Virus record (IMG/VR): IMGVR_UViG_3300044641_009805 | Coordinates: 124,001 to 188,000 of that record | DNA: 64,000 nucleotides | Direction: 5' to 3' (one strand) | Shown here: positions 589 to 41,572 of the stretch, one piece after another | How the letters are laid out: each line of letters starts with the position of its first letter | Numbering within the stretch: position 1 is the stretch's first letter | Translations under genes and position numbers: made by a program | The notes under the pieces: model-generated | Database searches by the model: none | Told to the model about the DNA's origin: nothing | The model's input: only the letters and a program-made list of their open reading frames with translations

Positions 589-1768
589 TGACAGAGTTAT
601 GTATTACTGCACCTAATGAATTTAATTTTTCAAAAAACAATTTAGAATATAAGTTAGAAGAGACATAAGATCCGTAAAGCTTAGAATCATTTATCACTCC
701 AAATTCTATCATAGATTTTATTGATCTAAGACAATAATCAACAGATTGTCTTTTTACGACAAAATCGCTGGTATCTGGAAGTCTAATAATGACATTATTT
801 GCTGACAAAGATCTTATTCTATCTTCATAGATTTCTTCTACATTTTTTGATTCTTCTCTTTTAGATAATAGAAATTTAATATGAGAATTGACATCAGATT
901 TTGATGATTGATTTTTTATGCAAATTGAATTAACGTAAATAGAGATTTCATCTACTTTTCTTGCATCATCTATAGAAATATTAGAAATCAGTTGGCCTAA
1001 ATTGCTAGAAAACAAAGATGCAGAACAAGCTATTGAGATATCATTAAGTTTGTTTATTCCTTCCAGATTAAACTCAACTACAATAGGATAAACTTCAATA
1101 GCTCCTCTAATTCTATTGACTTTCAGTGTATTTAAAACTTCGTCATGAAGTCCTCTAGCTATTAGAATTACAGGGTGTTTTGTTGAACTTGCTCCTTCAA
1201 GCAATAAATTAATCTCAGAAACAGATTCAACAAATCCATCAATAACGATGACTCTAGGATTTACTATTTTTATTGGTTTTTCTTCAAAAGTTTTTACTTT
1301 AAAGGTAAAACCATCAATAGCTTCAATTGAAGTAAAGTTATTGCTAGACTTTTCTACAGATATTCTGCCACCAAACCCAGCTAAAAGCACAGCGTCAAAT
1401 AATAAGTTGCTTAACGTGTTATCGTCTTTTGTTTGAGAAAAAATGATTTTTTTTAGATCATTCAAAGTAGCCTTGTTTGAAGATCTGGTTTTATCATCAA
1501 GATTAGAGTTTAATATCCTGTGTAACGTAAAGTCAAACCCACCAGGAGATATTTTTTCTGATAAAATACAATGTTCTATAATCAACCTATGAATAGCTAA
1601 TTTCAGTTGATTAGAATATTTTAAATTAAAAATTCCTTGAAATGAAGTTTTTAACAAAACTTGATCTTTTTCAAGGAATAATACTTTTTCTGTATTTAAA
1701 AAATTTCTTAAATCATCGCATACTTCTTTAAATGATTCAAGTATTTCTTTTTTTAGAAAAATTGTCAC
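575..1768 (-). CDS. GroEL/Cpn60-like chaperonin, shortened and divergent
   Basis: Apical-domain-like segment PRVIVIDGFVESVSEINLLLE...HPVILIARGLHDEVLNTLKVNRIRG, plus LNDISIAC and YEDRIRSLS (cf. LQERLAKL). Only 397 aa, and no GDGTTT motif. Confidence 0.75.
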   Translation of the reverse strand: MTIFLKKEILESFKEVCDDLRNFLNTEKVLFLEKDQVLLKTSFQGIFNLKYSNQLKLAIHRLIIEHCILSEKISPGGFDFTLHRILNSNLDDKTRSSNKATLNDLKKIIFSQTKDDNTLSNLLFDAVLLAGFGGRISVEKSSNNFTSIEAIDGFTFKVKTFEEKPIKIVNPRVIVIDGFVESVSEINLLLEGASSTKHPVILIARGLHDEVLNTLKVNRIRGAIEVYPIVVEFNLEGINKLNDISIACSASLFSSNLGQLISNISIDDARKVDEISIYVNSICIKNQSSKSDVNSHIKFLLSKREESKNVEEIYEDRIRSLSANNVIIRLPDTSDFVVKRQSVDYCLRSIKSMIEFGVINDSKLYGSYVSSNLYSKLFFEKLNSLGAVIHNSVIMSY

Positions 1769-1774
1769 AAAATC

Positions 1775-1803
1775 ATTGTAGCTTATTTTTGGCTAATGTT
1801 CAA
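1775..1803 (-). promoter_or_regulatory. Sigma70-type promoter, probably leaderless, for the GroEL-like gene
   Basis: Minus strand reads TTGAAC-17nt-TACAAT-6nt-GTG start. Confidence 0.65.
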
Positions 1804-2402
1804 ATAATTTGAATATGCGAATTAATGTAAGCATGTATTATCTTACCAATAGCACCTAAAATTGCTGTACCTACTGCAATTGAAAGCCATCTAGTAAAAG
1901 CTGCTTGTTTTTGATACCAAGATTGTAATTCTTTAATTACTTCAGAATGTTGATTTATAATCTTTGCAAGATTTTCATCATTTAGTTCTTCTTTTTGAGC
2001 TAGTTTTTCTTCATGAATTTTCCAGCTTTGTATCGAATGCAACTGTTCTTCTAACTCTTCAACTCTTTCAATTTCAGCTGTACTATTTTCAACATTCTTT
2101 ATTCTTGCATATAATCCATTATCAGGATTATACAAAACTTCTCTTATTTCGTCAACTTTAAAAACTAATTGAGTCTGTGATTGTTCTATTTTTTCAATTT
2201 TGTACATTAGATTTGAGAATCCACCATTCATTGCGGGAGCTGATAGGATTCTTTTTTGCATCTCTAAAATTTGTTGTCGATTGCTTTCAATAGCATCCAA
2301 AGTTTTTTTTGTTTCAACGTTATCAAGAGGATCTTTTTTGTCAATTTTTGCATCCGAAAAGTTCGGAGAACTTACTTGCGTATTAGTTTTTTTTCTTGAC
2401 AT
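1800..2402 (-). CDS. Coiled-coil protein with one C-terminal transmembrane helix (XhlA/holin-like topology)
   Basis: AGGAGG lies 6 nt before the ATG at 2402; heptad-rich body; WLSIAVGTAILGAIGKIIHAYI at the C-terminus. Confidence 0.6.
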   Translation of the reverse strand: MSRKKTNTQVSSPNFSDAKIDKKDPLDNVETKKTLDAIESNRQQILEMQKRILSAPAMNGGFSNLMYKIEKIEQSQTQLVFKVDEIREVLYNPDNGLYARIKNVENSTAEIERVEELEEQLHSIQSWKIHEEKLAQKEELNDENLAKIINQHSEVIKELQSWYQKQAAFTRWLSIAVGTAILGAIGKIIHAYINSHIQII

Positions 2403-2541
2403 ATACATCCTCCTAGACAATGTTATTTTTTCTAAGATTAAGATTTATAATTTACTAAATCTTATTTCTAAATCTATAAATTTAGATCAATTTACTTATA
2501 GAATTAATTATAATTCTTCAGAGAATTTAAAGAGGTAAATC

Positions 2542-4470
2542 TTGCAAACATTCAATAAAAGCATATTCGAAAATAGTTCTAGACCTCTCATCATTCCTGA
2601 TGAAGTTAAGGTTATTTTTGTAGCTGATCTCTTTTCAGAGGATTATGTCGGTGGAGCAGAACTAACCACGCAGGCTTTGATTGATGAGTGCCCTTTGCCT
2701 TACATGAAAATTCGTTCAAAAGAGCTGACCATGCACTTATTAGCTCAAGGAACTAATAAGTTTTGGATCTTTGGCAATTTTGCTCAAATGAACATGGAAC
2801 TAGTTCCAAGCATAATTGGAAATTTGAACTATTCTATCCTAGAATATGATTACAAATATTGCAAGTACAGATCTCCTGAAAAACATTCTGAAAAAACCGG
2901 ATCTCCGTGCGATTGTCATAATCAATTCAACGGAAAATTAATCTCTGCTTTTTACTACGGAGCAAAAGTTTTGTGGTGGATGTCAGAGGCGCAGAAAGAT
3001 CGTTATCACAGAATGTTCCCATTTTTATCTGAAAAAGATAATGTTGTCTTATCAAGCGTATTTTCGAAAAAAACCCTAGGTACCATCAAGTGGCTTAGAG
3101 AAGTTGTTTCTTCATCAGGATCAGATCGAAAAGGATGGGTAGTCTTAGGTTCAGAATCTTGGGTAAAAGGAGCTCAAGCTGCAGAAAAATGGTGCCTGGA
3201 CAACAAAGTAGAATATGAAGTTGTCTGGAATGTAGCTTACGAAGTCATGTTGGAAAAGCTAGCTAATGCAGAAGGGTTTGTATACCTTCCAGCAGGTGCT
3301 GATACCTGCCCAAGAATGGTCATAGAAGCGAAGCTTTTGGGTTGCAAACTTCATTTGAACGAAAACGTACAACATAAAAATGAAGATTGGTTCTCTACAA
3401 ATAACATTGAAGAGATTGAAGAGTACTTGTTTGGAGCACCAACTCTATTTTGGAATTACATAAAAAAGATGATGGAATATCGTCCTAACATCAGCGGATA
3501 CATGACGGTTTATAACGCATTGTCTCAAGAATATCCATTTATACAGTGCGTTAAGTCTATGCTTCCTTTTTGCGAGGAGGTTTGTATTGTTGATGGAGGT
3601 TCTACAGACGGCACTTGGGAGAAGCTTCAAGAATTGTCATCTACGGAAACAAAGATCAAACTGAAGCAAGTGACAAGAGATTGGAGCCATCCTAGATTTG
3701 CTGTTTTTGACGGAATGCAAAAAGCAGAAGCCCGTTCCATGTGCACAGGAGATTTTTGTTGGCAAATGGATTCAGATGAAATAGTGCACGAAGACGATTA
3801 TGAAAAAATATTAAACTTATGTGCAAAATTTCCAGCTAACGTAGATCTTATATCATTACCAGTTGTTGAATATTGGGGAGGTCCTAAGAAAGTTAGAGCC
3901 GACGTTCTTCCTTGGAAGTGGAGATTAAGTAAAAATAAGAAAAATATCACTCACGGAATACCTTCAGATGCTCGTCGAACTGATGAAAATGGAAATCTTT
4001 ATGCGGCTTATGGAGATGGATGTGACATGATAGATTCATCATCTTACGAAAGAATACCTCACGTAACTTTTTACACTTCTGAAGTTGACAGTGCAAGAAA
4101 GCAAGCAGTTTCCGGTGACGCTGAAGCAATAAAGAATTATCAAGAATGGTTCAACAAAGTCGTCGATAATTTGCCTGGAGTATTTCATTATAGCTGGTTT
4201 GATCTGCCCAGAAAGATTAAACTGTATAAGAAATATTGGACCAAACACTGGGAATCGTTGTCTGGAAAATCTTATGAAGATACTTCAGAATCAAATATGA
4301 TGTTTGATGTTCCTTGGTCACAAGTGACAGATGAAATGATAGAAGCTAGAGCTTCTGAACTCTCGGAAAAATTAGGCGGGTGGATTTGGCATCAAAAATG
4401 GGATGGTAAGACGAAAACTCATCATATAACGATAAGCAAATCTCAACCTAAAATTATGTTAGATAAATGA
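2542..4470 (+). CDS. Two-domain glycosyltransferase (GT-B/GT4-like N-half fused to GT2 C-half)
   Basis: N-half VGGAELTT...DTCPRMVIEAKLLGC; C-half YMTVYNA...IVDGGSTDGT...MDSDE; AGAGGT SD before a TTG start. Confidence 0.85.
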   Translation: MQTFNKSIFENSSRPLIIPDEVKVIFVADLFSEDYVGGAELTTQALIDECPLPYMKIRSKELTMHLLAQGTNKFWIFGNFAQMNMELVPSIIGNLNYSILEYDYKYCKYRSPEKHSEKTGSPCDCHNQFNGKLISAFYYGAKVLWWMSEAQKDRYHRMFPFLSEKDNVVLSSVFSKKTLGTIKWLREVVSSSGSDRKGWVVLGSESWVKGAQAAEKWCLDNKVEYEVVWNVAYEVMLEKLANAEGFVYLPAGADTCPRMVIEAKLLGCKLHLNENVQHKNEDWFSTNNIEEIEEYLFGAPTLFWNYIKKMMEYRPNISGYMTVYNALSQEYPFIQCVKSMLPFCEEVCIVDGGSTDGTWEKLQELSSTETKIKLKQVTRDWSHPRFAVFDGMQKAEARSMCTGDFCWQMDSDEIVHEDDYEKILNLCAKFPANVDLISLPVVEYWGGPKKVRADVLPWKWRLSKNKKNITHGIPSDARRTDENGNLYAAYGDGCDMIDSSSYERIPHVTFYTSEVDSARKQAVSGDAEAIKNYQEWFNKVVDNLPGVFHYSWFDLPRKIKLYKKYWTKHWESLSGKSYEDTSESNMMFDVPWSQVTDEMIEARASELSEKLGGWIWHQKWDGKTKTHHITISKSQPKIMLDK

Positions 4471-5189
4471 AAGGCGTAATATTAGCAGGTGGTACTGGAA
4501 GTCGTTTATATCCTTTAACAAAATCGACCAACAAATGTTTGCTTCCAATTGCAACCAAGCCGATGGTTTATCATGTTTTAGAATTGATGACTTCTTCAGG
4601 AATTGATGACATCATGTTGATCACAGGTCCTGAAAATGCAGGACAAGTCATGAATTTGTTGGGGTCAGGACTTGATTATTCCTGCTCTTTGACTTATAGA
4701 ATTCAAGATAAAGCTAACGGCATAGCAGCAGCAGTAAATCTTTGCAAGAGTTTTGTTGGAAACTCTAAATTTACCGTGTTATTAGGAGACAATATTTTTA
4801 GCGATTTTTCTAAACTAGCATCGCAAATTCGTGAGTTTTATTCATCGAAGGATGAATTTAGACTTTTCTTAAAAGAAGTAATAGACCCTCAAAGGTTCGG
4901 AGTACCAGTTTATCTTAATGATGAAGTTGTAGATATAATCGAAAAACCAAAATCTCCTCCTAGCAATAAAGCAATAGTGGGATTATACTGTTATTCTTCA
5001 AACGTCTTTGATGTGATTGAAGGTTTAAAGCCTTCTTCTCGCGGAGAATATGAGATATCGGAGTTAAATTCTTATCTAGTGAAAAATTGTAGTGGTAGCT
5101 TTTTTGATGTTGAATGTGAATGGGTAGACGCAGGAACTCATGAATCTTACAAAAAAGCTAATGAAATGATTTGGGAAACTTTAAAATGA
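4467..5189 (+). CDS. rmlA: Glucose-1-phosphate thymidylyltransferase
   Basis: MKGVILAGGTGSRLYPLT, LGDNIF, IIEKP, SRGEYEI, WVDAGT. Confidence 0.92.
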   Translation: MKGVILAGGTGSRLYPLTKSTNKCLLPIATKPMVYHVLELMTSSGIDDIMLITGPENAGQVMNLLGSGLDYSCSLTYRIQDKANGIAAAVNLCKSFVGNSKFTVLLGDNIFSDFSKLASQIREFYSSKDEFRLFLKEVIDPQRFGVPVYLNDEVVDIIEKPKSPPSNKAIVGLYCYSSNVFDVIEGLKPSSRGEYEISELNSYLVKNCSGSFFDVECEWVDAGTHESYKKANEMIWETLK

Positions 5190-6007
5190 AAGTAATCATC
5201 GGATCAGGGAAAGTAGCTAACATTATAAAAGATAAAGAAGACATTGTCTTGTCTCATTCGCAAATAGAGATTAAAGATGAAATGTCGATTGACTCGATTC
5301 TTTCTACATTTCCTGAAAAAACAGTAGTTGTAAACACTGCCGCTAAGATTAATCTAGAATGGTGCGAAGAGAACAAAAAAGAATCTGAACTAGTCAACGT
5401 AGTTGGTGCAGTAAACGTTGCAAAAATTTGCAAAAAATATCATCATCATCTATTACACGTTAGCAGCGGTTGCATTTTTGATGGAATGGAAACAGAAAAA
5501 GAGTATACTGAATTAGATGATCCATCACCAGCTTCTTGGTACGCACAAACTAAAGCAAATGCTGATATTTCGATCTTATCTTTGGGATATCAAAATATTA
5601 CGATAGTTCGACCTAGGCAGTTAATATCAGCTGTTCCTAATCCCACAAATATGTTAACTAAGTTTATGAATTTGCAAAAAGGCAATTTTATTGATTCAAA
5701 AAATTCTATTACTTGTATAGAAGATATGAAACTAATGATTGATCACCTGATTAGTAACAAATGTTATGGAGTCTATAATCTTGCAAACGTTGGTTGGATG
5801 AGCCCGTACCAAATAGCCAACAAAATAAAAGCTAAAATTTTTAGTGATTTTATCATCGATAAGATAAGCTACGATGATTATATAAAGAGTATAAAAGTAA
5901 AAAGAGTTAACACTTTACTAAGCGTAGACAAATTAATATCTACGGGATTTGTTCCCAGAAGTGCAGAGGAAGCTTTAGAATGGTGTTTAGAAAATTACGG
6001 GAATTAA
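5186..6007 (+). CDS. NDP-4-keto-6-deoxyglucose reductase of the RmlD superfamily, most like bifunctional 3,5-epimerase/4-reductase NRS/ER
   Basis: NLEWCE, SSGCIF, YAQTK (YxxxK), NPTNMLTK, NSITCIED; ATG at 5186 overlaps the rmlA stop (ATGA). Confidence 0.8.
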   Translation: MKVIIGSGKVANIIKDKEDIVLSHSQIEIKDEMSIDSILSTFPEKTVVVNTAAKINLEWCEENKKESELVNVVGAVNVAKICKKYHHHLLHVSSGCIFDGMETEKEYTELDDPSPASWYAQTKANADISILSLGYQNITIVRPRQLISAVPNPTNMLTKFMNLQKGNFIDSKNSITCIEDMKLMIDHLISNKCYGVYNLANVGWMSPYQIANKIKAKIFSDFIIDKISYDDYIKSIKVKRVNTLLSVDKLISTGFVPRSAEEALEWCLENYGN

Positions 6008-6008
6008 A

Positions 6009-7671: not shown

Positions 7672-8030
7672 AACAGCAAAATTTTCATGATTCTATCTCT
7701 AAACTATTGGTCGAAAGACTTTCAAAAAGAAAAAATCAAATTTTGAATAAAGCAACTTGCGTTGAGATTTATAATGATATATTTTTCACATTGTCTGAAG
7801 TGATAAAAACAGCTTCGACGCCTTTGTCAAATGAATCCGTGAATTTTTTAGCTCAAATGTACTATGACTCTATAAACATAAACGAGACTCAAGAATTAGA
7901 TCCTAACATCTTTACTCAAAGAGCTAGTTTAAAAAATATTGAAACTAAAGAAATCGCTTTAATGGCTGTCATGCTAAATGGCACTGAATTCGCTACGCCT
8001 TTCATTTCAGAGGTAAAACGAAGATCGTGA
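7668..8030 (+). CDS. Hypothetical protein
   Basis: 120-aa ORF translationally coupled to both neighbours; no recognised motif. Confidence 0.65.
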   Translation: MKQQNFHDSISKLLVERLSKRKNQILNKATCVEIYNDIFFTLSEVIKTASTPLSNESVNFLAQMYYDSININETQELDPNIFTQRASLKNIETKEIALMAVMLNGTEFATPFISEVKRRS

Positions 8031-10751: not shown

Positions 10752-10765
10752 ATAAGGAGACAAAT

Positions 10766-11680: not shown

Positions 11681-12813
11681 TGAACGTTTTAATATTTCCT
11701 ACAGATGATAGAAGTGGACTAGCTTCTATGATCTACCACTATTCAAAATTGGGACATAAAGTTTTTGTTCCTAAAAAAGGAACGCTTGGTCTAAACTGGC
11801 AAAGAATAGCAACTTGGCCTGCTATGCTTTGTAAATCTTTTGAAGACAAAACAAAAAGAAATTTAGAAATTTATCCATTTGAAGAAAATCTTTCTTTTTT
11901 TGGAGAAGATTACTTTTTGAAAGATTTTAAATCTCATAATCTTTATGAAGAAGACATCTATTGTCAAATCATAGATTTGACAAAACAAAAATGTTCAATT
12001 GATGTATTCCACACCTTGCGAGGCGGCGAAAGTTCTTTACGCCAATATTTCAAAATAGCTTCAGAATATTTCCCAAATGCAAAATGGGTATCTTCAACAA
12101 TGAATGCTTGGGATAGTTCACCTGAAAATTACAAAACAAGAAACGCCGCTAAATTTATTCCTGCAAACTATGAAAATAAAAATACAGACGTAAACAATGT
12201 TAATGTCTTTTGTCTGCCATTCGAAAAGTCATTACTTGACATCACGAATGTCTCTATTTCAGGTTACGAAGATGTTTCTTTTGCTTCGTTTAACCACAAC
12301 TTTGAAGTAAGACAACCAGAAGACTATAAGATATTCAAGAAAATGAATTCCTTGCTTAGAGAAATCAATCTACCAGAAGTAATAAACTTCGGTGGAAACA
12401 TCCGTAGCGCAGGAGCTGACATTAGATATTCAAAAGAAAATGGCGTGACTGGTAAATTTCCTACAATCACGCCCAGACAATCTTACAAAATTACGTCTAG
12501 ATTAAAGGCAGCCGTTCATTTCAAGCAGACCGATTGGGGAGGTGGCGTTTTTTATTATTGCTTAAATTCTGGAACTCCCATCATTACGACCAATAGGTAC
12601 GTTAATTCTTCAAACGCTTCAAAGTATCTTATAGATAACATTAATTGTATTCTTGTCGATGATGCTTTAAAAGCATCAAATTCAATTGAAAAATTGTTAT
12701 TTGATGATTCTTACGTTAATAAATTAAGAAATGGAATGTTAGAACTTCAAAAAGAGATTCTTAATAATTCTTATTGGAAAAAGTGGGAAAATTTTATTGG
12801 AGAACTAACATGA
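11680..12813 (+). CDS. Putative GT-B glycosyltransferase
   Basis: C-terminal DWGGGVFYYCLNSGTPIIT...LIDNINCILVDD resembles the GT4 nucleotide-binding region; operon context. Confidence 0.55.
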   Translation: MNVLIFPTDDRSGLASMIYHYSKLGHKVFVPKKGTLGLNWQRIATWPAMLCKSFEDKTKRNLEIYPFEENLSFFGEDYFLKDFKSHNLYEEDIYCQIIDLTKQKCSIDVFHTLRGGESSLRQYFKIASEYFPNAKWVSSTMNAWDSSPENYKTRNAAKFIPANYENKNTDVNNVNVFCLPFEKSLLDITNVSISGYEDVSFASFNHNFEVRQPEDYKIFKKMNSLLREINLPEVINFGGNIRSAGADIRYSKENGVTGKFPTITPRQSYKITSRLKAAVHFKQTDWGGGVFYYCLNSGTPIITTNRYVNSSNASKYLIDNINCILVDDALKASNSIEKLLFDDSYVNKLRNGMLELQKEILNNSYWKKWENFIGELT

Positions 12814-13637
12814 AAGATACTTTATTTCTTTTGGTCACTTGTACGAAAGATGTGACTAGATTTGAGATACTAAAACAAGTTGTTGATAATCTAGTTCATG
12901 TAATTGATAAAAAAACGTTAGATGATTTGTTGGTATTTGATAATGCTTCTTCTTACGAAGGCAGCGTAAAATTATTGACAGACAATTTTGTTAACGTTTA
13001 CCAATCAAAAACCAACATTGGACTTTGGAGCGCAATACATTGGTGCTTAAAAAATTACCAATCTTTGATGAAAAGAGACTACAAATATCTTTACATTATC
13101 GAGTCAGACTTAATTCATTCCAATGACACTCTAAAAAAATTAGAAACATGTGAATCATTTTTAGAATCTAACAGTGAAGTAGGATTTATAAGGACAGAAG
13201 AATTTTTAGTTTCACAAAGACATTTGTACGATAAAGGAAGCCCAAAAAAAGATTCAAGAAAATACGCCTGGGTAACTCAAAATAACTTTATCCAAAACAA
13301 AAGAGTAGAGTTTTTTCAGTCAGATTGTGACGGTATGTATAAATGCAATTTTTTGGCAAAACTACCAGCCCTCAGCAGAATTCAAACTATGAAAGAAGTT
13401 TTTTTAGATCTTTCTAACTTAAAAAAGTTCAATGAGACTGATTATCAAAAGTTGTACTATCAAAGATATAAAATTTCAGCTGTCTTAGACGGAGGCATAT
13501 TTCATTCTAAGTTAGGAAATGAAAATACGGATGTAGTCATCAACGGCAGCAGGAATTACAACCTTAGCATTGATTACAGACCGACTAGATCTGATTCAAT
13601 AACTGAAATTTCTTTAGACGATGTTGTTAAACTTTGA
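12810..13637 (+). CDS. Putative GT2-like glycosyltransferase
   Basis: LVFDNASS, NIGL, YIIESD. Confidence 0.65.
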   Translation: MKDTLFLLVTCTKDVTRFEILKQVVDNLVHVIDKKTLDDLLVFDNASSYEGSVKLLTDNFVNVYQSKTNIGLWSAIHWCLKNYQSLMKRDYKYLYIIESDLIHSNDTLKKLETCESFLESNSEVGFIRTEEFLVSQRHLYDKGSPKKDSRKYAWVTQNNFIQNKRVEFFQSDCDGMYKCNFLAKLPALSRIQTMKEVFLDLSNLKKFNETDYQKLYYQRYKISAVLDGGIFHSKLGNENTDVVINGSRNYNLSIDYRPTRSDSITEISLDDVVKL

Positions 13638-13662
13638 ACAGTTTTTTTCGTGAAAGTATAAT
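13634..13662 (+). promoter_or_regulatory. Sigma70-type promoter, probably leaderless
   Basis: TTGAAC-17nt-TATAAT-7nt-ATG(13670); no SD. Confidence 0.7.
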
Positions 13663-13669
13663 TTGAACG

Positions 13670-14695
13670 ATGAAGTATCTAATATTCGGTGGAACTGGTT
13701 CCTTAGGAAAAAAATTAATTTCTAGATTTTTAAAAAGTGGCGATAAAATCGCTGTTTATTCTAGAGATGAAGCTAAGCATTGGACTATAAAGAACGAACT
13801 CAATTCTTCATCAGAAGTAGAGTTTTTTGTTGGAGACATTAGAGATTATAACCGAGTAAAAGAAGTTATACTTCATTACAAACCTCAAGTCATAATTGTC
13901 GCTGCTGCTTTAAAACAAGTTGATACTTGTGAGCTCAGTCCTTTTGAAAGCGTAATGACCAATTTATTAGGAACTCAAAATGTCGTTAAGTCAGTAAAAG
14001 ACATATCACAGTCTTGGGGATCTGACTGGAGGATAGAAAAAGTTTTGTTTGTTAGCACGGACAAAGCTTGTTCTCCTGTCAACGTTTACGGAATGTGTAA
14101 AGGAATATCTGAACGTCTAGTAACAAGTCAATCTAAAAATGATTCAACTGGCGTTAAATTTTTGTGCACCAGGTATGGAAACGTCCTAGAGTCTAGAGGA
14201 AGCATTATTCCACTTTTCAAATATCAAGCAGAATATTCTGAGAATCTAACAGTGACAGATCCAGATATGACCAGATTTGTTATGACCTTAGATGACAGCG
14301 TAGATCTAATTTTAGAAGCTTTAAAAAGAGGAGAAAGCGGAGAAACCTGGATTCCTAAAATACCTGCAATGAGGATTGGAGATCTAGCTGAAATTTTCTC
14401 AAGTTTGTATAAAAAGCAGATTAAGATCATTGGTCTTAGACCAGGAGAAAAAAAGCATGAAGATCTTATTAATGAGTCAGAGTCTGTTAGAACTAAAGAC
14501 GTAGAAACCCATTACGTAATAGGACCAGCTTATCAAGCAGGTTCTAACGATAGATTCATGTATACAAGCGCTGATGATGTCATGACAAAAGATCAGCTTT
14601 TTGTTAGATTAAAAGAACTTGGAATTATTGATATGTCTTTAGATAATTTTCAAGGATTAAAGATAGAAGAGATTGCAACAAACAGGAAAAACTAA
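13670..14695 (+). CDS. UDP-GlcNAc 4,6-dehydratase (PseB/FlaA1/CapD family)
   Basis: GGTGSLG, YSRDEAK, GDIRD, AAALKQV, STDKAC.PVNVYGMCK, RYGNVLESRGS, MTRF, GLRPGEKKHE. Confidence 0.92.
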   Translation: MKYLIFGGTGSLGKKLISRFLKSGDKIAVYSRDEAKHWTIKNELNSSSEVEFFVGDIRDYNRVKEVILHYKPQVIIVAAALKQVDTCELSPFESVMTNLLGTQNVVKSVKDISQSWGSDWRIEKVLFVSTDKACSPVNVYGMCKGISERLVTSQSKNDSTGVKFLCTRYGNVLESRGSIIPLFKYQAEYSENLTVTDPDMTRFVMTLDDSVDLILEALKRGESGETWIPKIPAMRIGDLAEIFSSLYKKQIKIIGLRPGEKKHEDLINESESVRTKDVETHYVIGPAYQAGSNDRFMYTSADDVMTKDQLFVRLKELGIIDMSLDNFQGLKIEEIATNRKN

Positions 14696-14696
14696 T

Positions 14697-15839: not shown

Positions 15840-16362
15840 AGCTAAAGAATTAACACATCAAAAATTCTCATTAAGAGAAGTTTGCGATGATGATCATCTT
15901 TGGTTAGTAGAACTTCATAACGATCCTGAAGTTTTGAAAAACTTAACTAATCCTCAACCTATTACTTTAGAATCTCACTTAAATTGGTGGAATTCTTTGA
16001 ATAAAGAAAAAGAAAAAAGATACGTTTTTTGTGTTAATGAAGAAAAAGTAGGATTTTGCAAAATCTATTCAATAGATCGTAATAACAAAAATTGTTTATT
16101 AGGAGCAGATATACACAAAGACTATAGAGGAAAAGGGTTAGCAAAGCACATGTGGCAATTAATGCTTCATGTTTGTTTTAATGAGTTAAGTCTACACAGG
16201 GTTTCTTTAACCACAGCATCCTATAATTTGATAGGACAAAGAGTTTACAAAAATCTAGGATTCAAAGAAGAAGGTAGACAAATTGAATCGTTGTACAGAG
16301 AAGAAAAATATCATGATTCTATATGCATGTATTTGTTAAAACAAGACTGGAATAACAAATGA
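15826..16362 (+). CDS. GNAT N-acetyltransferase (PseH/RimL-like)
   Basis: ITLESHLNWW, YRGKGLA, VYKNLGFKEEG. Confidence 0.88.
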   Translation: MSTVEAKELTHQKFSLREVCDDDHLWLVELHNDPEVLKNLTNPQPITLESHLNWWNSLNKEKEKRYVFCVNEEKVGFCKIYSIDRNNKNCLLGADIHKDYRGKGLAKHMWQLMLHVCFNELSLHRVSLTTASYNLIGQRVYKNLGFKEEGRQIESLYREEKYHDSICMYLLKQDWNNK

Positions 16363-17063
16363 AAATTTTCGTTGGAACGATGGAACATGGAGAACTAGAT
16401 TTTCAAGCTTCTAAAGAATCAATTCAAAATCAAGTTGGTTTTGAAATAACTCATCACATAGTTTCAAATCATCCAGAAAAAGAAGCTCATGAAAAATTAT
16501 TTTCCGCGTGGAATGAAGCTAAAAAAGATCATCAACTTTTCTTGAAGGTTGATGCCGATACTGTCTTGTCTCATAATGAAGTTATAAAAAACTTTGTTGA
16601 AGTTTTTGAAAGTAACTCTAGAGTAACAGGTGCGCAAGCTTGGTTACACGATTATTTGACAGACAGCTTGATATATGGACTAACTTGCTTAAAAAACACT
16701 GTCAATGTTGCAACAAAAGTTGATAAGTTGTATCCTGATCGAGCAGACACGGGTCATGATATCGTTTTACGCGGAAATCAATTACCTGAAAAGTTAATAC
16801 CTGCCGGGAAGCATTGCTGGTACTCTTCAGAATCTCAAGCATTTCATTACGGCTTTCATAGAGGTAAAAAGAACCAATCAGACATTCTTAATAAGGTCTA
16901 TTCTGCTTGGGAAAAAAACGATTTTGACAGAATCAGAGGCATGTGTCTAATGGGATTTAAGTTGTCTTTATCGTACGAAAATGTTGATTATAGAGATGAA
17001 GATTTTCAAAATGCTTTTGAAATTGCTAAGAGAACTTACTCAAAAGAAAAAGTAAAAAGATGA
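16359..17063 (+). CDS. Putative GT-A glycosyltransferase
   Basis: FLKVDADTVL (DxD motif); operon context. Confidence 0.55.
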   Translation: MKIFVGTMEHGELDFQASKESIQNQVGFEITHHIVSNHPEKEAHEKLFSAWNEAKKDHQLFLKVDADTVLSHNEVIKNFVEVFESNSRVTGAQAWLHDYLTDSLIYGLTCLKNTVNVATKVDKLYPDRADTGHDIVLRGNQLPEKLIPAGKHCWYSSESQAFHYGFHRGKKNQSDILNKVYSAWEKNDFDRIRGMCLMGFKLSLSYENVDYRDEDFQNAFEIAKRTYSKEKVKR

Positions 17064-17965
17064 AATTGCATGTATTGATTGACAACTTGTCTTACATTCA
17101 GTCTAACTGTTATCAACATCAGTTATTCAAAACTTTAAGTCAAGAGTGTGAATTGACCTTTAGCACAATTGATGACATATTGAAGAATAAAAAAATATCT
17201 TCAAACCATGATAGGATATTGTCATGTTTAAAGCTTAGGACAATAAACAACAACGTTCATACAATTAAGAGGTTTTTAGATAATAGAGAAATTTATATCT
17301 ATGAACAGGATCCTTGGGAATCTTTCAAAGATGATTCGCAATATAAGGGTTCATATCATAAGATTTATAACGAGTTGAATGTTTTATCCTTCTTAAATAC
17401 GTCGAAGTGGTGGAGCGACTTTATCAACTCTCAAGGAATAAGGTCTAAATTTGTGAAGATGTGGATGTTGCCAGAATATTGTTCTGCTGTTCCTAATTTA
17501 TCTTCACGACAAATAGATTTAGGCTTTTGTGGCCAACTACATCCTTATAGGAAAAAATTCTTTGATTATCTTAAAAGTGAAGGAATTGTTGTCGAGGTGA
17601 TGAAACCTGCTCCTTACCAAGAATTTTTGCAAAATTTGTCAAATATAAAAATCTATGTGCATAATGAGCAAGTCAATTGGCAGGTGAATGGAAAAAACAT
17701 CTCAGCAAATGCGCTGTGGATTAAAGATGTTGAGGCCGCAGCTAGAGGTTGTATAAGCATCAGAGATTATGAAGAAGAATTAGAAAATTATGTTCCTAAA
17801 AATAATATCTCTACGATAATGACTTATGATTCATTTGAGAATGCAATTGAAGTGATAAGAAGAAACTTGAAAGAAGTGAATCAACTTCAAGACAAAATAA
17901 TTGAATCAGTGAACGCAATAAAGAATGATGTTGGATGGAAAACTGTTATTAAGGCGTTAGAATAA
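17060..17965 (+). CDS. Putative GT-B (CgeB/YkvP-like) glycosyltransferase
   Basis: RQIDLGFCGQLHPYRKK ... KDVEAAARGC. Confidence 0.55.
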   Translation: MKLHVLIDNLSYIQSNCYQHQLFKTLSQECELTFSTIDDILKNKKISSNHDRILSCLKLRTINNNVHTIKRFLDNREIYIYEQDPWESFKDDSQYKGSYHKIYNELNVLSFLNTSKWWSDFINSQGIRSKFVKMWMLPEYCSAVPNLSSRQIDLGFCGQLHPYRKKFFDYLKSEGIVVEVMKPAPYQEFLQNLSNIKIYVHNEQVNWQVNGKNISANALWIKDVEAAARGCISIRDYEEELENYVPKNNISTIMTYDSFENAIEVIRRNLKEVNQLQDKIIESVNAIKNDVGWKTVIKALE

Positions 17966-17967
17966 TC

Positions 17968-17996
17968 TTGATCATTTTTTTATTTTTTCTTATAAT
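17968..17996 (+). promoter_or_regulatory. Sigma70-type promoter, probably leaderless
   Basis: TTGATC-17nt-TATAAT-6nt-ATG(18003); no SD. Confidence 0.7.
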
Positions 17997-18002
17997 CTTT
18001 GT

Positions 18003-18935
18003 ATGAAGAAACAATCTATTGCTGTTGTAGGTCAAGGGTTTGTTGGCGGCTCTCTTACTACTGTCTTTGCTGAAAGAGGATTCGACGTCTTGGTGCATGA
18101 CAAGACAGGAAAAGTCTGTACTGGAGGAAAGCAACCAACAACAACAGAAGGATTACACCCGACTAATGTAAATGAGTTCGTAAAGTCATGTGAAGCATCT
18201 GAAAACTTCTCAAAAGTGTATTTTGTGTGTCTACCGACTCCGATGTATGATGACGGATCTGCGGATCTGTCTATCGTAGAAGGTGTTCTTTCGCAATTGG
18301 CAACTTTACCTGGCGAGAGAATTGCTGTAGTAAAATCCACGGTTCCTCCTGGCTCTACTGAGAGATGGAACAAGATGTTTTCAGAACAAGGCCTTCATGT
18401 AGTTTTTAATCCAGAATTTCTCACAGAGGCCAACGCTCTAGATGACATGAGAAATCAAAATCGTATTATTCTTGGTGGCCCTCGCCCATGGATTAATACC
18501 GTGAAACAAGTTTTTCAAACAGCATTTCCAAAAGTTCCACTCATTAAAACTTCGTCAACGACAGCTGAGATGGTGAAATATGTCACTAATAACTTCCTGA
18601 CAGTTAAGGTTTCGTTTGCAAACGAGATGTATCAGGTTTGTAATGCCCTAGATAAATCCGGATTAAATGTGGATTATGATAAGGTAATTGAATATGCAAA
18701 GTATGATTCTAGGTTAGGATCAAGCCACTGGAGTGTACCTGGACCTGATGGTGACTTTGGCAGCGGGGGTCACTGTTTCCCTAAGGACATCAATGCTATG
18801 ATCGACGTTGCAAAAAATCTTGAAGTTAAACCGACTGTTCTTAAAGCTGCGTGGGAAAAGAATCTTGAGGTTAGAAAAGACAGAGATTGGGAACGTATGT
18901 CTGGCCGCGCAGTTTCTAAAAAATCCAAAGATTGA
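18003..18935 (+). CDS. UDP-glucose/GDP-mannose dehydrogenase family, short form
   Basis: VGQGFVG, CLPTP, KSTVPPGST, NPEFL, KYVTNNFL, catalytic GGHCFPKD. Confidence 0.9.
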   Translation: MKKQSIAVVGQGFVGGSLTTVFAERGFDVLVHDKTGKVCTGGKQPTTTEGLHPTNVNEFVKSCEASENFSKVYFVCLPTPMYDDGSADLSIVEGVLSQLATLPGERIAVVKSTVPPGSTERWNKMFSEQGLHVVFNPEFLTEANALDDMRNQNRIILGGPRPWINTVKQVFQTAFPKVPLIKTSSTTAEMVKYVTNNFLTVKVSFANEMYQVCNALDKSGLNVDYDKVIEYAKYDSRLGSSHWSVPGPDGDFGSGGHCFPKDINAMIDVAKNLEVKPTVLKAAWEKNLEVRKDRDWERMSGRAVSKKSKD

Positions 18936-18939
18936 ACTA

Positions 18940-18963
18940 ATAAGGTAATGTAAATTACCTTAT
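18940..18963. promoter_or_regulatory. Perfect 10-bp inverted repeat overlapping the putative promoter of the nuclease gene
   Basis: ATAAGGTAAT-gtaa-ATTACCTTAT, lying within TTGAAC-18nt-TACCTT-6nt-ATG(18968). Confidence 0.5.
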
Positions 18964-18967
18964 AACA

Positions 18968-19786
18968 ATGCAAGAAAATAATAGTTCCTTCCAAACTTTG
19001 CCTACTGGAAAACCGCATGTTTCTTTTTCTGAGGTAAAGTTATGGAAGGAATGTTCTTTTAGACATCATCTAATTCATATTAAAAAGATTGATTTGTCTA
19101 AACCTTCTCCTGTTTTAGACTTTGGAACCGCTGTCCATGCATCTTGCGAAAAATATCTGTTGACTCGAGAGATGGATCAGCAGGTCGCGTTTAGTCATCT
19201 AGACAATGCTTGGAAGAAGCATGAAGACAATCCTGATTTTTCTAAATCTGCTTTAGAGAAAGCTAAAGTTGAAGTATCTCAAATTCTATCTGAGGTTCCT
19301 GCATTTTTAGATAAAGAGTTTCCTGAATGGCAAGTCGTTGATGCAGAGCATCAACTTTATGAAGCCGTTGAAGGTCATCCTCATGCATTCAAAGGTTTTA
19401 TTGATGGAGTCATTAAAGCCAAGGGTAAAAGAGGAGAAACAGTCTATTGGATTCTCGATTGGAAAACTACTATAAGAGGGTGGTTTCGAGAAAAAAGATC
19501 AGACGACATGGTAAAAGCCCAGCTGGCTCTTTACAAAAACTATTGGTGTCAAAAAAATCCTAATGTTCCATTCAAGGATGTTAGATGCGGTTTTGTGCTT
19601 TTGAAAAAGTCAGCAAAACCAGGAGAACATTGCGAGTTATTTTCTGTTTCTCTTGGTGAGGTCCCAATTAAGAAATCTCTTAAGGTTGTTGGAAACATGT
19701 TGACCTCTGTCAAACGAGGCATTGCCATCAAAAATAGAGATGCATGCACATACTGTGAGTATAAAGGCACTGAGCATTGCACATAA
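18968..19786 (+). CDS. PD-(D/E)XK RecB/Cas4-like exonuclease with probable Fe-S cluster
   Basis: SFSEVKLWKEC, FGTAVH, KGFIDG, ILDWKT, QLALY, C-terminal CTYCEYKGTEHC. Confidence 0.88.
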   Translation: MQENNSSFQTLPTGKPHVSFSEVKLWKECSFRHHLIHIKKIDLSKPSPVLDFGTAVHASCEKYLLTREMDQQVAFSHLDNAWKKHEDNPDFSKSALEKAKVEVSQILSEVPAFLDKEFPEWQVVDAEHQLYEAVEGHPHAFKGFIDGVIKAKGKRGETVYWILDWKTTIRGWFREKRSDDMVKAQLALYKNYWCQKNPNVPFKDVRCGFVLLKKSAKPGEHCELFSVSLGEVPIKKSLKVVGNMLTSVKRGIAIKNRDACTYCEYKGTEHCT

Positions 19787-19846
19787 TTTTTTGTTAGTTT
19801 GATGAATTTTTATTACAACTTTTGAAAAGTAGGTAATATATCGTTG

Positions 19847-21091
19847 ATGCAGAAAAAGACAATATTGTTACTTTCAGATCACCCACTTTCTACGAGCGGA
19901 GTAGGAACTCAAGCTAGATGGTTGATTAATGGATTGATTTCTACAGGAAAATATAAGTTTAAGTGCTTCGGCGGTGCAATGAAGCATGAAGACTATAGAA
20001 CGATTGTAGTAAATGAAGATTTCATTATCAAACCGACTAACGGATTTGGTGACAGAAATCTTTTGCGACAAGTCCTTGCGACTGAACGACCAGACGCTCT
20101 AATGCTATTTACCGATCCTAGATTTTTTATTTGGGTTTGGGAAATGGAGGATGAAATACATCAAATATGTCCAATCGCATACAATCATCTATGGGATAAC
20201 GGTCCTTGGCCAGAATTCAATAAAGTGCTATATGAATCTACTGATTTAGTCAATTGTATAAATTGGCCCACCTATCAAATGGTTAAGGAAAGATTTCCAG
20301 AAAAAACCAACTATATTCCTCATGGAGTTCCAAAAGAAATCTATTATCCTCTACCTGAAGATAATTCTAGAAAAAACAAAGTTAAGATCTTAGGTTCCGA
20401 TAGAGCAGATCACTTTGTGGCTCTATATGTCTCTAGAAATGCTAGAAGAAAAATGCCAAGCGATATTTTAGTGTCTTGGAAGCAATTTTTAGATGCTTTG
20501 CAAGAAAAGCATGGTCATAAAAAAGCTACACTTTTGATGCATACAGATCCTCTTGATCATGAAGGTCCTAATCTTTATCATGTTATTGAGATGCTTCAAA
20601 TAGAAAATCATGTGAAATTTTCTAAGAGTAGAGTTGATTTTAATGAAATGAGAGAAGTTTATTCGGCATGTGATACAATCGTTAATAGAAGCTCTAATGA
20701 AGGATTTGGTTTACCCACTTTAGAAGCTATGATGTGTGGAAAGCCCATTATTGCTATTAAAACCGGAGGGTTAACTAGACAAGTTGAAGATCTAGAGACT
20801 GGTGAACAATATGGGATTGCATTAGAACCTGACGTTAAATCTCTGGTTGGTAATCAAATGGTACCTTTCATTTACGAAGATTTAGTTACTCATGAAAAAT
20901 TAGCAAATGCATTTTTAGAAATGTATGAATGGGGTCCTGATAAGAGAAAGCAAGTCGGAATGAGAGCATTAGAACACGCTCACAAAGACTATGATCTAAA
21001 GAAGATTGTTTCTGATTGGGATGTTTCATTGACAAAACTGATTGAAACTTGGAAAGACCAAAGAAAAGCTTGGGAGGTAAATTCTCTATGA
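19847..21091 (+). CDS. Glycosyltransferase family 4
   Basis: SGVG, IPHGV, RNARRK, EGFGLPTLEAMMCGKP. Confidence 0.92.
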   Translation: MQKKTILLLSDHPLSTSGVGTQARWLINGLISTGKYKFKCFGGAMKHEDYRTIVVNEDFIIKPTNGFGDRNLLRQVLATERPDALMLFTDPRFFIWVWEMEDEIHQICPIAYNHLWDNGPWPEFNKVLYESTDLVNCINWPTYQMVKERFPEKTNYIPHGVPKEIYYPLPEDNSRKNKVKILGSDRADHFVALYVSRNARRKMPSDILVSWKQFLDALQEKHGHKKATLLMHTDPLDHEGPNLYHVIEMLQIENHVKFSKSRVDFNEMREVYSACDTIVNRSSNEGFGLPTLEAMMCGKPIIAIKTGGLTRQVEDLETGEQYGIALEPDVKSLVGNQMVPFIYEDLVTHEKLANAFLEMYEWGPDKRKQVGMRALEHAHKDYDLKKIVSDWDVSLTKLIETWKDQRKAWEVNSL

Positions 21092-41553: not shown

Positions 41554-41572
41554 TGCAATAGTTTATTCTAAT

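What the first reader, a model, noticed from the sequence alone, without database searches (positions are those of the whole stretch)
1766..19849. Recurrent leaderless-mRNA promoter architecture with a TTGA(A/T)C -35 box
Seen: the -10 box ends 6-8 nt before the start codon, so any transcript from it leaves no room for an SD. Clear cases: 1768(-) TTGAAC-17-TACAAT-6-GTG; 13670 TTGAAC-17-TATAAT-7-ATG; 18003 TTGATC-17-TATAAT-6-ATG; 18968 TTGAAC-18-TACCTT-6-ATG. Weaker cases: 19847 (TAATAT-7-ATG), 41553(-) (TAAACT-6-TTG) and 42936(-) (TATAAT-8-ATG). In contrast, sheath and tube genes have AGGAG leaders. Inference: early/middle transcripts start at the start codon, giving a two-tier translation strategy and a clue to the host.
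Basis: partly seen in the sequence, partly recalled or inferred. Interest (0 to 1): 0.65.

Follow-up and report, generated by a model that had tools for sequence, protein, structure and literature searches.

The report
Leaderless promoters in lake jumbo phage
A 278-kb T4-like phage from lake water places sigma-70-type promoters so close to many start codons that the mRNAs should begin at the ATG itself. This is a known way of expressing genes, used here on an unusually large and stereotyped scale.

Summary
All claimed sites are present at the stated coordinates. The pattern is not chance. Genome-wide, TAnnnT ends 6-7 nt before 45 called starts against about 17 expected (P~1e-8). The closest cultured relative, which is AT-rich, shows no such peak.

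The four clear cases sit in 31-37-nt gaps that a promoter fills exactly. In three of them the TGA inside TTGAAC is the stop codon of the upstream gene.

In 30-40 related lake phages the boxes and their distance to the ATG are conserved for the genes at 18968 and 19847, while the spacers vary.

Outside the window the same phage has about 46 copies of a second cassette, GTGCAAAGT-N15-TAnnnT-N6-ATG. Copies of that cassette not fused to an ATG still have A at +1. They run into leaders with a proper Shine-Dalgarno sequence, or into a tRNA. This supports a promoter whose start site is the A of the ATG.

No transcript 5' ends could be obtained, so "leaderless" remains a strong inference. The early/middle timing and the host clue are unproven. 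The phage encodes its own RpoD-like sigma factor, and the host is unknown.

This is a new member of a known kind.

The parts
1766..1803 (-). Promoter fused to the start codon: TTGAAC (1803-1798, containing the TGA stop 1802-1800 of the upstream ORF 1800..2420), 17 nt, TACAAT (1780-1775), 6 nt, GTG (1768-1766). The ORF 575..1768 is 397 aa and matches a PHROG annotated as chaperonin GroEL.
   Evidence: GTG is the first possible start (in-frame TAG 27 nt upstream; next candidate at +111). In the relative with 82% N-terminal identity, the boxes, the 6-nt stretch and the GTG are kept while the spacer changes from 17 to 18 nt. Only 2 relatives were found.
13634..13672 (+). Promoter fused to the start codon: TTGAAC (containing the TGA stop 13635-13637 of ORF 12774..13637), 17 nt, TATAAT 13657-13662, 7 nt, ATG 13670 of a PseB-like dehydratase (Polysacc_synt_2).
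   Evidence: Pfam aligns residue 4 to profile position 2. An in-frame TGA lies two codons upstream, and this ATG is the only start candidate. Relatives at 77-94% N-terminal identity keep TTGAAC or TTAAAC and TAnnnT at d=6-7 with altered spacers. About 18 GC-richer relatives have TAnnnT 5-8 nt before the ATG, directly after the upstream stop.
17968..18005 (+). Promoter fused to the start codon: TTGATC, 17 nt, TATAAT 17991-17996, 6 nt, ATG 18003 of a UDP-glucose/GDP-mannose dehydrogenase-family protein.
   Evidence: Pfam aligns residue 5 to profile position 2. In relatives the gene often carries xTGAAC or TTGAAA, 17 nt, then (T/G)ATAAT. In close relatives this abuts the ATG. A more distant clade has the same kind of promoter followed by a short leader with AAGGAG.
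18932..18970 (+). Promoter fused to the start codon: TTGAAC (containing the TGA stop 18933-18935 of the dehydrogenase gene), 18 nt, TACCTT 18956-18961, 6 nt, ATG 18968 of a PD-(D/E)XK nuclease.
   Evidence: More than 30 distinct relatives (60-100% protein identity) keep (T/A)TGAACtaa, a 17-18-nt spacer of variable sequence, TAnnnT (mostly TACTAT), mostly 6 nt, then ATGCAAGAA.
19812..19849 (+). Promoter with a 0-1-nt leader: ATTACA 19812-19817, 16 nt, TAATAT 19834-19839, 7 nt, ATG 19847 of a GT4 glycosyltransferase. This is a different -35 type from TTGAAC.
   Evidence: About 40 relatives keep (A/G)TTACAA, N15-16, TAATAT or TACGAT, then 7-9 nt to the ATG or GTG. A distant clade has an SD-led TTG start instead.
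42934..42950 (-). Candidate only: TATAAT 42950-42945, 8 nt, ATG 42936, at the head of a minus-strand block facing a 172-nt divergent intergenic region. No good -35 box.
   Evidence: Only near-identical relatives were found, so conservation could not be tested.
41551..41565 (-). Weak candidate: TAAACT 41565-41560, 6 nt, TTG 41553. No -35 box, and a TTG start.
   Evidence: Only near-identical relatives were found. The promoter classes were screened only for ATG/GTG starts, so TTG use was never measured. Among unconstrained GTG[ACT]AA-N18-TAnnnT hits, 46 have ATG or GTG at this position and one weak site has TTG. I regard this site as probably chance.
53636..53651 (+). Contrast: SD-led start of sheath paralog 1 (AAGGAG, 7 nt, ATG 53649).
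56724..56739 (+). Contrast: SD-led start of sheath paralog 2 (AGGAG, 8 nt, ATG 56737).
63129..63145 (+). Contrast: SD-led start of the tail tube gene (AGGAG, 9 nt, ATG 63143).

Best explanation
The flagged sites are genuine sigma-70-family promoters (a -35-like box, a 16-18-bp spacer, a TAnnnT -10 box). They are placed so that the usual start site, 7 nt after the -10 box, is the A (or G) of the start codon, or the base just before it. RNA polymerase should therefore make mRNAs with a 0-2-nt leader and no Shine-Dalgarno sequence, and ribosomes must start on the 5'-terminal AUG/GUG (leaderless initiation).

In the window this applies to the genes at 1768(-), 13670, 18003, 18968 and 19847. These are internal promoters of a sugar-nucleotide/glycosyltransferase block. 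Each fills a 31-57-nt gap and often uses the upstream gene's TGA stop as part of TTGAAC.

The same phage uses this layout genome-wide:
- 14 sites of the TTGAAC type.
- About 46 sites of a stereotyped GTGCAAAGT-N15-TAnnnT-N6-ATG cassette at genome 51-76 kb and 253-276 kb, outside the window.

Structural genes and some others use ordinary SD-led starts.

Shown: the sequence layout, its positional enrichment, its conservation in relatives, and the correctness of the start codons.
Inferred: the start site, leaderless translation, the temporal class, and which sigma factor reads each class.
For: 1. Positional peak of TAnnnT at d=6-7 before starts: 45 observed, 16.8 expected. It survives removal of in-frame stop-type hexamers.
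2. Sharp dependence on d for both classes: TTGAAC type 7 and 5 sites at d=6 and 7, at most 2 at any other d; GTG[CT]AA type 35 and 2.
3. Start codons are fixed by Pfam N-terminal alignments and in-frame stops. The Mre11/Rad50-like protein at a TTGAAC-type site aligns from residue 2.
4. Footprints: boxes and spacing are conserved and spacers vary in more than 30 lineages for 18968 and about 40 for 19847, with smaller sets for 13670, 18003 and 1768.
5. Logo of 46 GTGCAAAGT-cassette sites: G at -14 in 44/46, T-12 A-11 T-7, pyrimidine at -1 in 45/46, A at +1 in 44/46. These are the known extended -10 and Y-1/R+1 start-site features.
6. Copies of that cassette not fused to an ATG keep A at +1. They run into 27-41-nt leaders with AAGGAG or GAAAGGA 6-9 nt before the ATG, or into tRNA-Leu after 13 nt.
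7. In relatives, 117 independent variant cassette sites: 87 have ATG at d=6 and 104 have A at +1.
8. ORFs behind the cassette tile the region: 89% open 50 or more codons, against 37% for control ATGs.
9. Controls: Microcystis phage Mel-JY01 (GC 0.34) and an AT-rich marine-like clade show no d=6/7 peak, while freshwater relatives do.
10. Published work treats TANNNT about 12 nt upstream of the start codon as the signature of leaderless genes (PMC3160421). It was shown experimentally to act as a -10 box in Deinococcus (PMC12340547).
Against: No 5' ends were mapped. The two runs labelled RNA-Seq are probably DNA, and their contig pieces run across the 13670, 18003 and 18968 junctions.

The window sites lie inside a co-directional gene block, so read-through transcripts must also exist. 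Other genes of that block are translated with neither an SD nor a promoter, so lack of an SD does not by itself force leaderless initiation.

One clear case starts with GTG, which works poorly on leaderless mRNAs in E. coli (from my own knowledge), although it works in mycobacteria (PMC4633059, title and abstract only).

Generic promoter-like matches are as frequent as in shuffled sequence, so a single site without conservation data (41553, 42936) proves little.
Confidence: 0.8

Rival explanations
1. The boxes are real promoters, but they add little. The genes would be expressed mainly from long read-through transcripts and translated by coupling or SD-independent internal initiation. The closeness of the promoter to the ATG would then only reflect genome compaction.
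For: The window sites are inside a co-directional block, with stops overlapping the -35 box. Many neighbouring genes have neither an SD nor a promoter. No terminators separate the cassettes.
Against: Compaction alone does not explain a fixed 6-7-nt distance kept over dozens of lineages. It also does not explain why the same promoters, when followed by a leader, always bring an SD.
Confidence: 0.1
2. TAnnnT at -12..-7 acts in the RNA as a non-SD ribosome-binding or enhancer element, not as a -10 box.
For: It lies where a ribosome-binding site would lie. The sites are A/U-rich in the window.
Against: Partner boxes sit at a fixed 16-18 bp upstream. G at -14 and Y-1/R+1 are present. The GC-rich -10 variants (TAGGAT, TAAGGT) are not A/U-rich. 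The cassette also precedes a tRNA and leadered genes with their own SD. In Deinococcus the motif could not be replaced by an RBS (PMC12340547).
Confidence: 0.04
3. Chance matches in AT-rich intergenic DNA, or wrongly chosen start codons.
For: Promoter-like matches are not enriched overall. My gene calls are home-made.
Against: The positional statistics use the first possible start, not a chosen one. An AT-rich control phage shows no peak. Starts are verified by Pfam alignments. Footprints are conserved.
Confidence: 0.03
4. On who reads the promoters: some or all classes are read by the phage's own RpoD-like sigma factor rather than the host's. The architecture would then say little about the host's promoters, though still something about its ribosomes.
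For: A 277-aa sigma factor has region 2.3/2.4 almost identical to RpoD, but the recognition helix of region 4.2 is replaced by a short acidic tail. That tail is conserved in homologues at 52-62% identity over the C-terminal part. Its gene sits next to GTGCAAAGT arrays in at least three related contigs. The GTGCAAAGT box is a poor match to TTGACA.
Against: Strong phage early promoters can differ from the host consensus and still use the host sigma factor, as in T4 (PMC2988021). The GTGCAAAGT class drives small ORFs and tRNAs, which look like early genes. The truncated sigma factor could equally be a late factor comparable to T4 gp55.
Confidence: 0.3

Closest known systems
Leaderless genes with a -10 box next to the ORF in Actinobacteria and Deinococcus-Thermus (PMC3160421, PMC12340547)
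   Same: TAnnnT with its first T about 12 nt before the start codon, no SD, and a mixture with SD-led genes in the same genome. Orthologues switch between the two modes, as seen here between phage clades.
   Different: Here it is in a phage. The -35 boxes are strong and conserved, and one class is a near-invariant 36-bp cassette present about 46 times. The host is unknown.
Lambda PRM-cI leaderless mRNA (10.1101/2023.09.02.556006) and, from my own memory, the leaderless middle/late mRNAs of Thermus phage phiYS40
   Same: Phage genes whose transcripts start at the AUG.
   Different: Lambda has a single such gene. The phiYS40 comparison is from memory and was not checked in a paper. The jumbo phages with mapped start sites that I could read have none (phiKZ, PMC8244752) or long leaders (AR9, PMC5312081).
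T4 early and middle promoters (PMC2988021)
   Same: A T4-like phage with dozens of stereotyped promoters. It combines a -10 TAnnnT with an extended -10 G and a phage-specific upstream box centred near -31, as the MotA box is near -30.
   Different: The box sequence and spacing differ (GTGCAAAGT, 14-15 bp from the -10 box; MotA box TGCTTtA, 12+/-1 bp). No MotA or AsiA hit was found. As far as I know, T4 promoters are not fused to start codons.
PeSL promoter-terminator cassettes of T4-like phages (PMC2839356, PMC4122927)
   Same: A conserved early-type promoter repeated between small ORFs of unknown function in a variable region of a T4-like genome. Such repeats could serve as points of exchange.
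   Different: There is no room for a stem-loop: the stop codon abuts the next promoter. The promoter is also fused to the ATG.

Membership tests
Leaderless genes (-10 box adjacent to the start codon) | TAnnnT with a positional peak about 12 nt (first T) upstream of start codons | tested here: met
   Peak at d=6-7, 45 observed against 16.8 expected; per-d counts.
Leaderless genes (-10 box adjacent to the start codon) | No SD between the promoter and the start codon | tested here: met
   Only 6-7 nt separate the -10 box from the start codon. No SD match at usable spacing at the four clear sites; 19847 has only AGGT at 12 nt.
Leaderless genes (-10 box adjacent to the start codon) | Transcription start mapped at, or within a few nt of, the start codon | tested here: inconclusive
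   Only contigs of runs that are probably DNA were available. Indirect support comes from A at +1 and from the leadered copies.
Leaderless genes (-10 box adjacent to the start codon) | Translation from a 5'-terminal AUG/GUG | not testable with these tools
   Among sites screened for ATG or GTG only, 57 are ATG and 3 GTG. TTG was excluded by the screens, so its use was not measured.
Sigma-70-type -35/-10 promoter | -10 TAnnnT plus a -35 TTGnnn box at 16-18 bp | tested here: met
   TTGAAC/TTGATC at 17-18 bp at four window sites and 14 sites genome-wide. 19847 has ATTACA at 16 bp. The GTGCAAAGT class matches TTGACA in only 3 of 6 positions.
Sigma-70-type -35/-10 promoter | Boxes and spacing conserved while spacer sequence drifts in relatives | tested here: met
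Sigma-70-type -35/-10 promoter | RNA polymerase binding and initiation | not testable with these tools
   Needs in vitro transcription or in vivo mapping.
T4 middle promoter (sigma appropriation) | MotA box (a/t)(a/t)(a/t)TGCTTtA 12+/-1 bp upstream of the -10 box (PMC2988021) | tested here: not met
   The box is GTGCAAAGT at -36..-28, 14-15 bp from the -10 box.
T4 middle promoter (sigma appropriation) | MotA and AsiA genes present | tested here: inconclusive
   No Pfam hit in the genome, but the control genomes were silent too and the record is about 84% complete.
T4 late promoter | TATAAATA upstream of late genes | tested here: not met
   7 copies in the genome, only 1 within 80 nt upstream of a called start.
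PeSL cassette | Composite of a stem-loop terminator and an early promoter between small variable ORFs | tested here: not met
   The repeated promoter between small ORFs is present. However, ORF stops abut the next promoter (for example 60603/60604, 72397/72398, 73949/73950), leaving no stem-loop.

The most novel reading that the evidence does not exclude
A widespread family of lake jumbo phages runs a large part of its programme through a portable 36-bp promoter-plus-ATG cassette. In this reading the cassette is recognised not by the host sigma factor but by a phage 'split' sigma: an RpoD-like protein that keeps -10 recognition but has lost its -35-reading helix, working with a separate 104-aa protein that carries a region-4.2-like helix-turn-helix. 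The phage would then control both promoter choice and the (SD-free) mode of translation of its own genes.
Probability: 0.15. Interest if true: 0.75.

Novelty: new member of a known kind. Interest (0 to 1): 0.55.

Why it matters
Annotation. Gene callers that reward an SD will mis-start or miss such genes. About 27 of the small ORFs behind the GTGCAAAGT cassette were missed by my own coding-score caller. In this phage family the promoter itself marks the start codon to the base.

Biology. About 60 promoter-ATG fusions in one phage, shared by many lake phages, imply a host whose ribosomes handle leaderless mRNAs well, or a phage that tilts translation that way. This narrows the host search. It also gives a testable system for leaderless expression in a virus. 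The conserved boxes are ready-made probes for finding further members in metagenomes.

Tried and rejected
- RNA evidence. I take these for mis-binned phage fragments.\n - The tRNA set decodes A/U-ending codons, which only hints at a GC-richer host.\n - Actinobacteria remain a guess based on habitat and leaderless use, not a result.\n- DNA similarity to known phages for 13000-20000: none.\n- MotA/AsiA and the T4 late motif: not found.\n- An anti-SD-like CACCTCCT at the 5' end of one leadered transcript (genome 56732, minus strand) looked intriguing. The 7-mer CACCTCC occurs about 40 times in the genome, and the transcript simply leads into an ORF with its own SD, so I dropped it.\n- Start-codon bias (57 ATG and 3 GTG, against 66 ATG, 15 GTG and 15 TTG for SD-led starts) is only suggestive.

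Full report
WHAT THE WINDOW IS

The window is bases 124001-188000 of a single 278,435-bp contig. It is an IMG/VR virus record, linear, with CheckV completeness of about 84%. GC is 0.43 overall but ranges from 0.32 to 0.57 along the contig.

It is a distant T4-like myovirus. It encodes a gp15-like protein, a baseplate wedge protein, three tandem sheath paralogs of about 1,020 aa, a tube protein and collagen-like fibres. The best cultured match for the sheath is Microcystis phage Mel-JY01, at 31% identity.

Window 2.5-23 kb is a block of glycosyltransferases and sugar-nucleotide enzymes:
- PseB-like dehydratase at 13670
- DegT aminotransferase at 14673
- UDP-glucose dehydrogenase family at 18003
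- PD-(D/E)XK nuclease at 18968
- GT4 glycosyltransferase at 19847

Near-identical DNA occurs in lake and freshwater metagenomes of 19 studies.

THE OBSERVATION

Two details can be added.

- In three of the four clear cases (1768-, 13670, 18968), the TGA inside TTGAAC is the stop codon of the upstream gene.
- These are the only co-directional gaps longer than 25 nt in the first 20 kb, and they measure 31-57 nt. A promoter plus 6-7 nt fills them exactly.

The contrast with SD-led sheath and tube genes also holds.

IS IT MORE THAN CHANCE?

The raw number of promoter-like matches is not informative: 71 were found in 1-20000 and 78.9 are expected from shuffles. Their position is informative.

I called 311 genes with a simple coding-score method. 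I always used the first possible start of each ORF, so that no promoter or SD information entered the choice.

- TAnnnT ends 6 nt before the start in 30 genes and 7 nt before it in 15. The mean at other distances is 8.4 (P 9e-9).
- A -10 box at d=6 puts TAn in frame, so TAA/TAG stops could inflate the count. I repeated the test with TA[TC]nnT only: 26 observed, 7.4 expected (P 8e-8).
- ATG follows at d=6/7 after 4.2% of all TAnnnT in the genome, but after 8 of 25 TTGAAC-16..18-TAnnnT sites.
- Sites of the form [TA]TGAA[CA]-16..18-TAnnnT-d-[AG]TG that open at least 50 codons number 7 at d=6, 5 at d=7, and at most 2 at any other d from 0 to 19.
- The same pipeline on Mel-JY01 (GC 0.34) gives no peak: 8 and 6, against a background of about 8. 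AT-richness alone therefore does not create the signal.

ARE THE START CODONS RIGHT?

- 13670: Pfam aligns residue 4 to profile position 2. An in-frame TGA lies two codons upstream, and there is no other start candidate.
- 18003: residue 5 aligns to profile position 2. The next candidate start would remove the Rossmann glycine motif.
- 18968: the N-terminus (ATGCAAGAA) is conserved in more than 30 relatives.
- 1768(-): GTG is the first possible start after an in-frame TAG, and the next candidate is 111 nt downstream.

These points rest. A further TTGAAC-type site outside the window precedes an Mre11/Rad50-like protein whose Metallophos domain aligns from residue 2.

CONSERVATION IN RELATIVES

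I fetched relatives of four of the genes from IMG/VR and lined up the DNA before the inferred starts.

- PD-(D/E)XK gene (18968). More than 30 distinct lineages at 60-100% protein identity keep (T/A)TGAACtaa, a 17-18-nt spacer of unrelated sequence, TAnnnT (mostly TACTAT), usually 6 nt, then ATG.
About 40 lineages keep (A/G)TTACAA, N15-16, TAATAT or TACGAT, then 7-9 nt to the start. This is a real promoter with a different -35 box.
- PseB-like gene (13670). Close relatives keep TTGAAC or TTAAAC and TAnnnT at d=6-7, with changed spacers. About 18 GC-richer relatives have TAnnnT (TAGGAT, TACGAT, TACAGT and others) 5-8 nt before the ATG, directly after the stop of the upstream gene.
- Dehydrogenase gene (18003). 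Relatives often carry xTGAAC or TTGAAA, 17 nt, then (T/G)ATAAT.

A more distant clade has the dehydrogenase and GT4 genes with a promoter-like box followed by a short leader carrying AAGGAG. Orthologues therefore switch between leaderless-type and SD-led starts, as described for bacteria (PMC3160421).

Pooled flanking genes of the freshwater relatives show the d=6 peak (44 against about 10; 13 against about 3). An AT-rich marine-like clade does not.

A SECOND, MUCH LARGER CLASS OUTSIDE THE WINDOW

While listing all TAnnnT-near-start cases I found a second class. At genome 51-76 kb, and again at 253-276 kb, almost every small ORF is preceded by GTGCAAAGT, 15 nt, TAnnnT, 6 nt, ATG.

- The loose pattern GTG[ACT]AA-N18-TAnnnT has 62 hits. 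Of these, 46 are followed by exactly 6 nt and then ATG or GTG.
- Of 34 GTG[CT]AAAG-N16-TAnnnT sites, 32 have ATG at d=6/7.
- The logo of the 46 sites shows G at -14 in 44, invariant T-12, A-11 and T-7, a pyrimidine at -1 in 45, and A at +1 in 44. G at -14 belongs to the extended -10 element. A pyrimidine at -1 followed by a purine at +1 is the usual start-site preference of bacterial RNA polymerase (established knowledge).
- The ORFs tile the region. The stop codon of one, often TGA, abuts the next cassette. 89% open at least 50 codons, against 37% for control ATGs in the same region.
- The exact 39-nt pattern occurs in 88 stretches of IMG/VR contigs, many of them multi-copy.
- In those contigs, 117 independent variant sites (not of the form used for retrieval) have ATG at d=6 in 87 cases and A at +1 in 104.

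THE MOST TELLING INTERNAL CONTROL

A few copies of this cassette are not fused to an ATG. They still have A at the same position.

- Three run into leaders of 27-41 nt that carry AAGGAAAC, GAAAGGA or AAGGAG 6-9 nt before the ATG of a long ORF.
- One runs into tRNA-Leu after 13 nt.

So the element precedes non-coding genes too, which argues that it is a promoter and not a translation signal. The phage supplies an SD whenever there is a leader, and none when the ATG sits at +1. That is what a deliberate leaderless design predicts.

WHAT IS NOT SHOWN

No transcript 5' ends were obtained. The only runs labelled RNA-Seq are rated as probably DNA. They gave low-depth contig pieces that cross the junctions at 13670, 18003 and 18968.

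The temporal class is inferred from gene content:
- The cassette class drives small ORFs of unknown function and tRNAs.
- The TTGAAC class drives Mre11/Rad50-like, PolA-fragment, pterin-dehydratase-like, GapR-like, PseB-like, dehydrogenase and nuclease genes.

Translation in the window is not simply two-tier. Many genes of the sugar block overlap their neighbours and have neither an SD nor a promoter, and SD-led starts occur in the same block (2402-, 2542, 10766, 21088).

WHO READS THE PROMOTERS, AND THE HOST

The phage encodes a 277-aa RpoD/RpoS-like sigma factor at genome 78902-79735, with its own strong SD.

- Its region 2.3/2.4 is almost identical to RpoD, so a TAnnnT -10 box is expected.
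- Pfam finds no region 4.
- The alignment to E. coli sigma-70 shows the 4.2 recognition helix replaced by a short acidic tail. This tail is conserved in homologues at 52-62% identity over the C-terminal part.
- A separate 104-aa ORF at genome 119383-119697 carries a region-4.2-like helix-turn-helix.

Which class, if any, these proteins serve is open. The sigma factor could read the cassette class, or it could be a late factor comparable to T4 gp55.

What remains is that the host's ribosomes must translate 5'-terminal AUGs efficiently. Published surveys find that mainly in Actinobacteria and Deinococcus-Thermus (PMC3160421).

I could not assign a host:
- No WhiB, psbA, S21 or IF3 was found.
- The cassette occurs only on short, discordantly labelled MAG contigs.
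- The 14 phage tRNAs read A/U-ending codons, a weak hint of a GC-richer host.

COMPARISON WITH WHAT IS KNOWN

In function, this matches the '-10 box adjacent to the ORF' mode of Deinococcus-Thermus and Actinobacteria (PMC3160421, PMC12340547) and the lambda PRM-cI transcript (10.1101/2023.09.02.556006). From memory, Thermus phage phiYS40 uses leaderless middle and late mRNAs; I did not find the paper.

Jumbo phages with mapped starts that I could read differ. phiKZ has no leaderless transcript (PMC8244752), and AR9 has leaders of 26-491 nt (PMC5312081).

The cassette class resembles T4 middle promoters in layout: a phage-specific box near -30 plus a host-type -10 box, often extended. It fails the MotA-box test in sequence and spacing, and no MotA or AsiA was found (PMC2988021).

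It resembles PeSL cassettes in being a repeated promoter between small variable ORFs, but it has no stem-loop (PMC4122927).

VERDICT

The main interpretation, promoters that yield leaderless mRNAs, is well supported by sequence and comparative evidence. Two weak sites remain untested, and one of them is probably chance. Timing and host remain inferences.

The mechanism is of a known kind. What is new is its scale and regularity in a T4-like jumbo phage family of lakes, and the co-occurrence with a sigma factor that lacks its -35-reading helix.

Confidence in the main explanation is 0.8. Interest is 0.55.

Noticed in passing
Outside the window: genome 51000-76000 and 253000-276000 (G000:C1): About 46 copies of a near-invariant cassette, GTGCAAAGT-N15-TAnnnT-N6-ATG. 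Each is fused to a small ORF, and the ORFs tile the region with stops abutting the next cassette. This region has GC 0.55-0.57, against 0.32-0.35 in the sugar block. The same pattern is multi-copy in many IMG/VR lake contigs.
   Followed up: yes
Outside the window: genome 78902-79735 (L089:1315-2148) and genome 119383-119697 (L288:1333-1647): An RpoD-like sigma factor whose region 4.2 recognition helix is replaced by a short acidic tail (conserved in homologues), plus a separate 104-aa ORF with a region-4.2-like helix-turn-helix. This may be a two-part sigma factor.
   Followed up: partly
window 18942-18961: An 8-bp hairpin (AAGGTAAT gtaa ATTACCTT) covers the spacer and the -10 box of the 18968 promoter. 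Two related lineages (L253, L217) have different sequences there that also form a hairpin over the -10 box. Most other relatives do not.
   Followed up: partly
window 17040-17061 and 17967-17991: In two lake metagenomes a separate contig of about 1.6 kb shares only short stretches (18-25 nt) around gene 17060-17965. In one of them (X1) the second stretch, 17967-17991, is the -35 box and spacer of the 18003 promoter. Loose ends occur at 17061 and 17967. This may indicate cassette exchange at promoter sequences, as proposed for PeSLs.
   Followed up: no
window 53649-63076: Three tandem tail-sheath paralogs of 1,011, 1,023 and 1,021 aa, about twice the usual sheath length.
   Followed up: no
window 41573-42464 (-): A PTH2-type peptidyl-tRNA hydrolase and a NADAR-domain protein sit side by side in a short minus-strand block between tail genes.
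   Followed up: no
Outside the window: genome 52059-53806 (-), 62143-62217, 82717-82789: 14 tRNA genes, 12 of them in one array, all reading A/U-ending codons. One cassette promoter lies 13 nt upstream of tRNA-Leu.
   Followed up: partly
window 2542-23316: A block of roughly 20 kb of glycosyltransferases and sugar-nucleotide enzymes (PseB-like, DegT, UDP-glucose dehydrogenase family, GT2, GT4) in a phage. It is shared in variable form by many lake phage contigs.
   Followed up: partly
whole genome: No enrichment of the T4 late promoter TATAAATA, and no MotA or AsiA hit, although the virion genes are T4-like. The late promoters of this phage are unidentified.
   Followed up: partly
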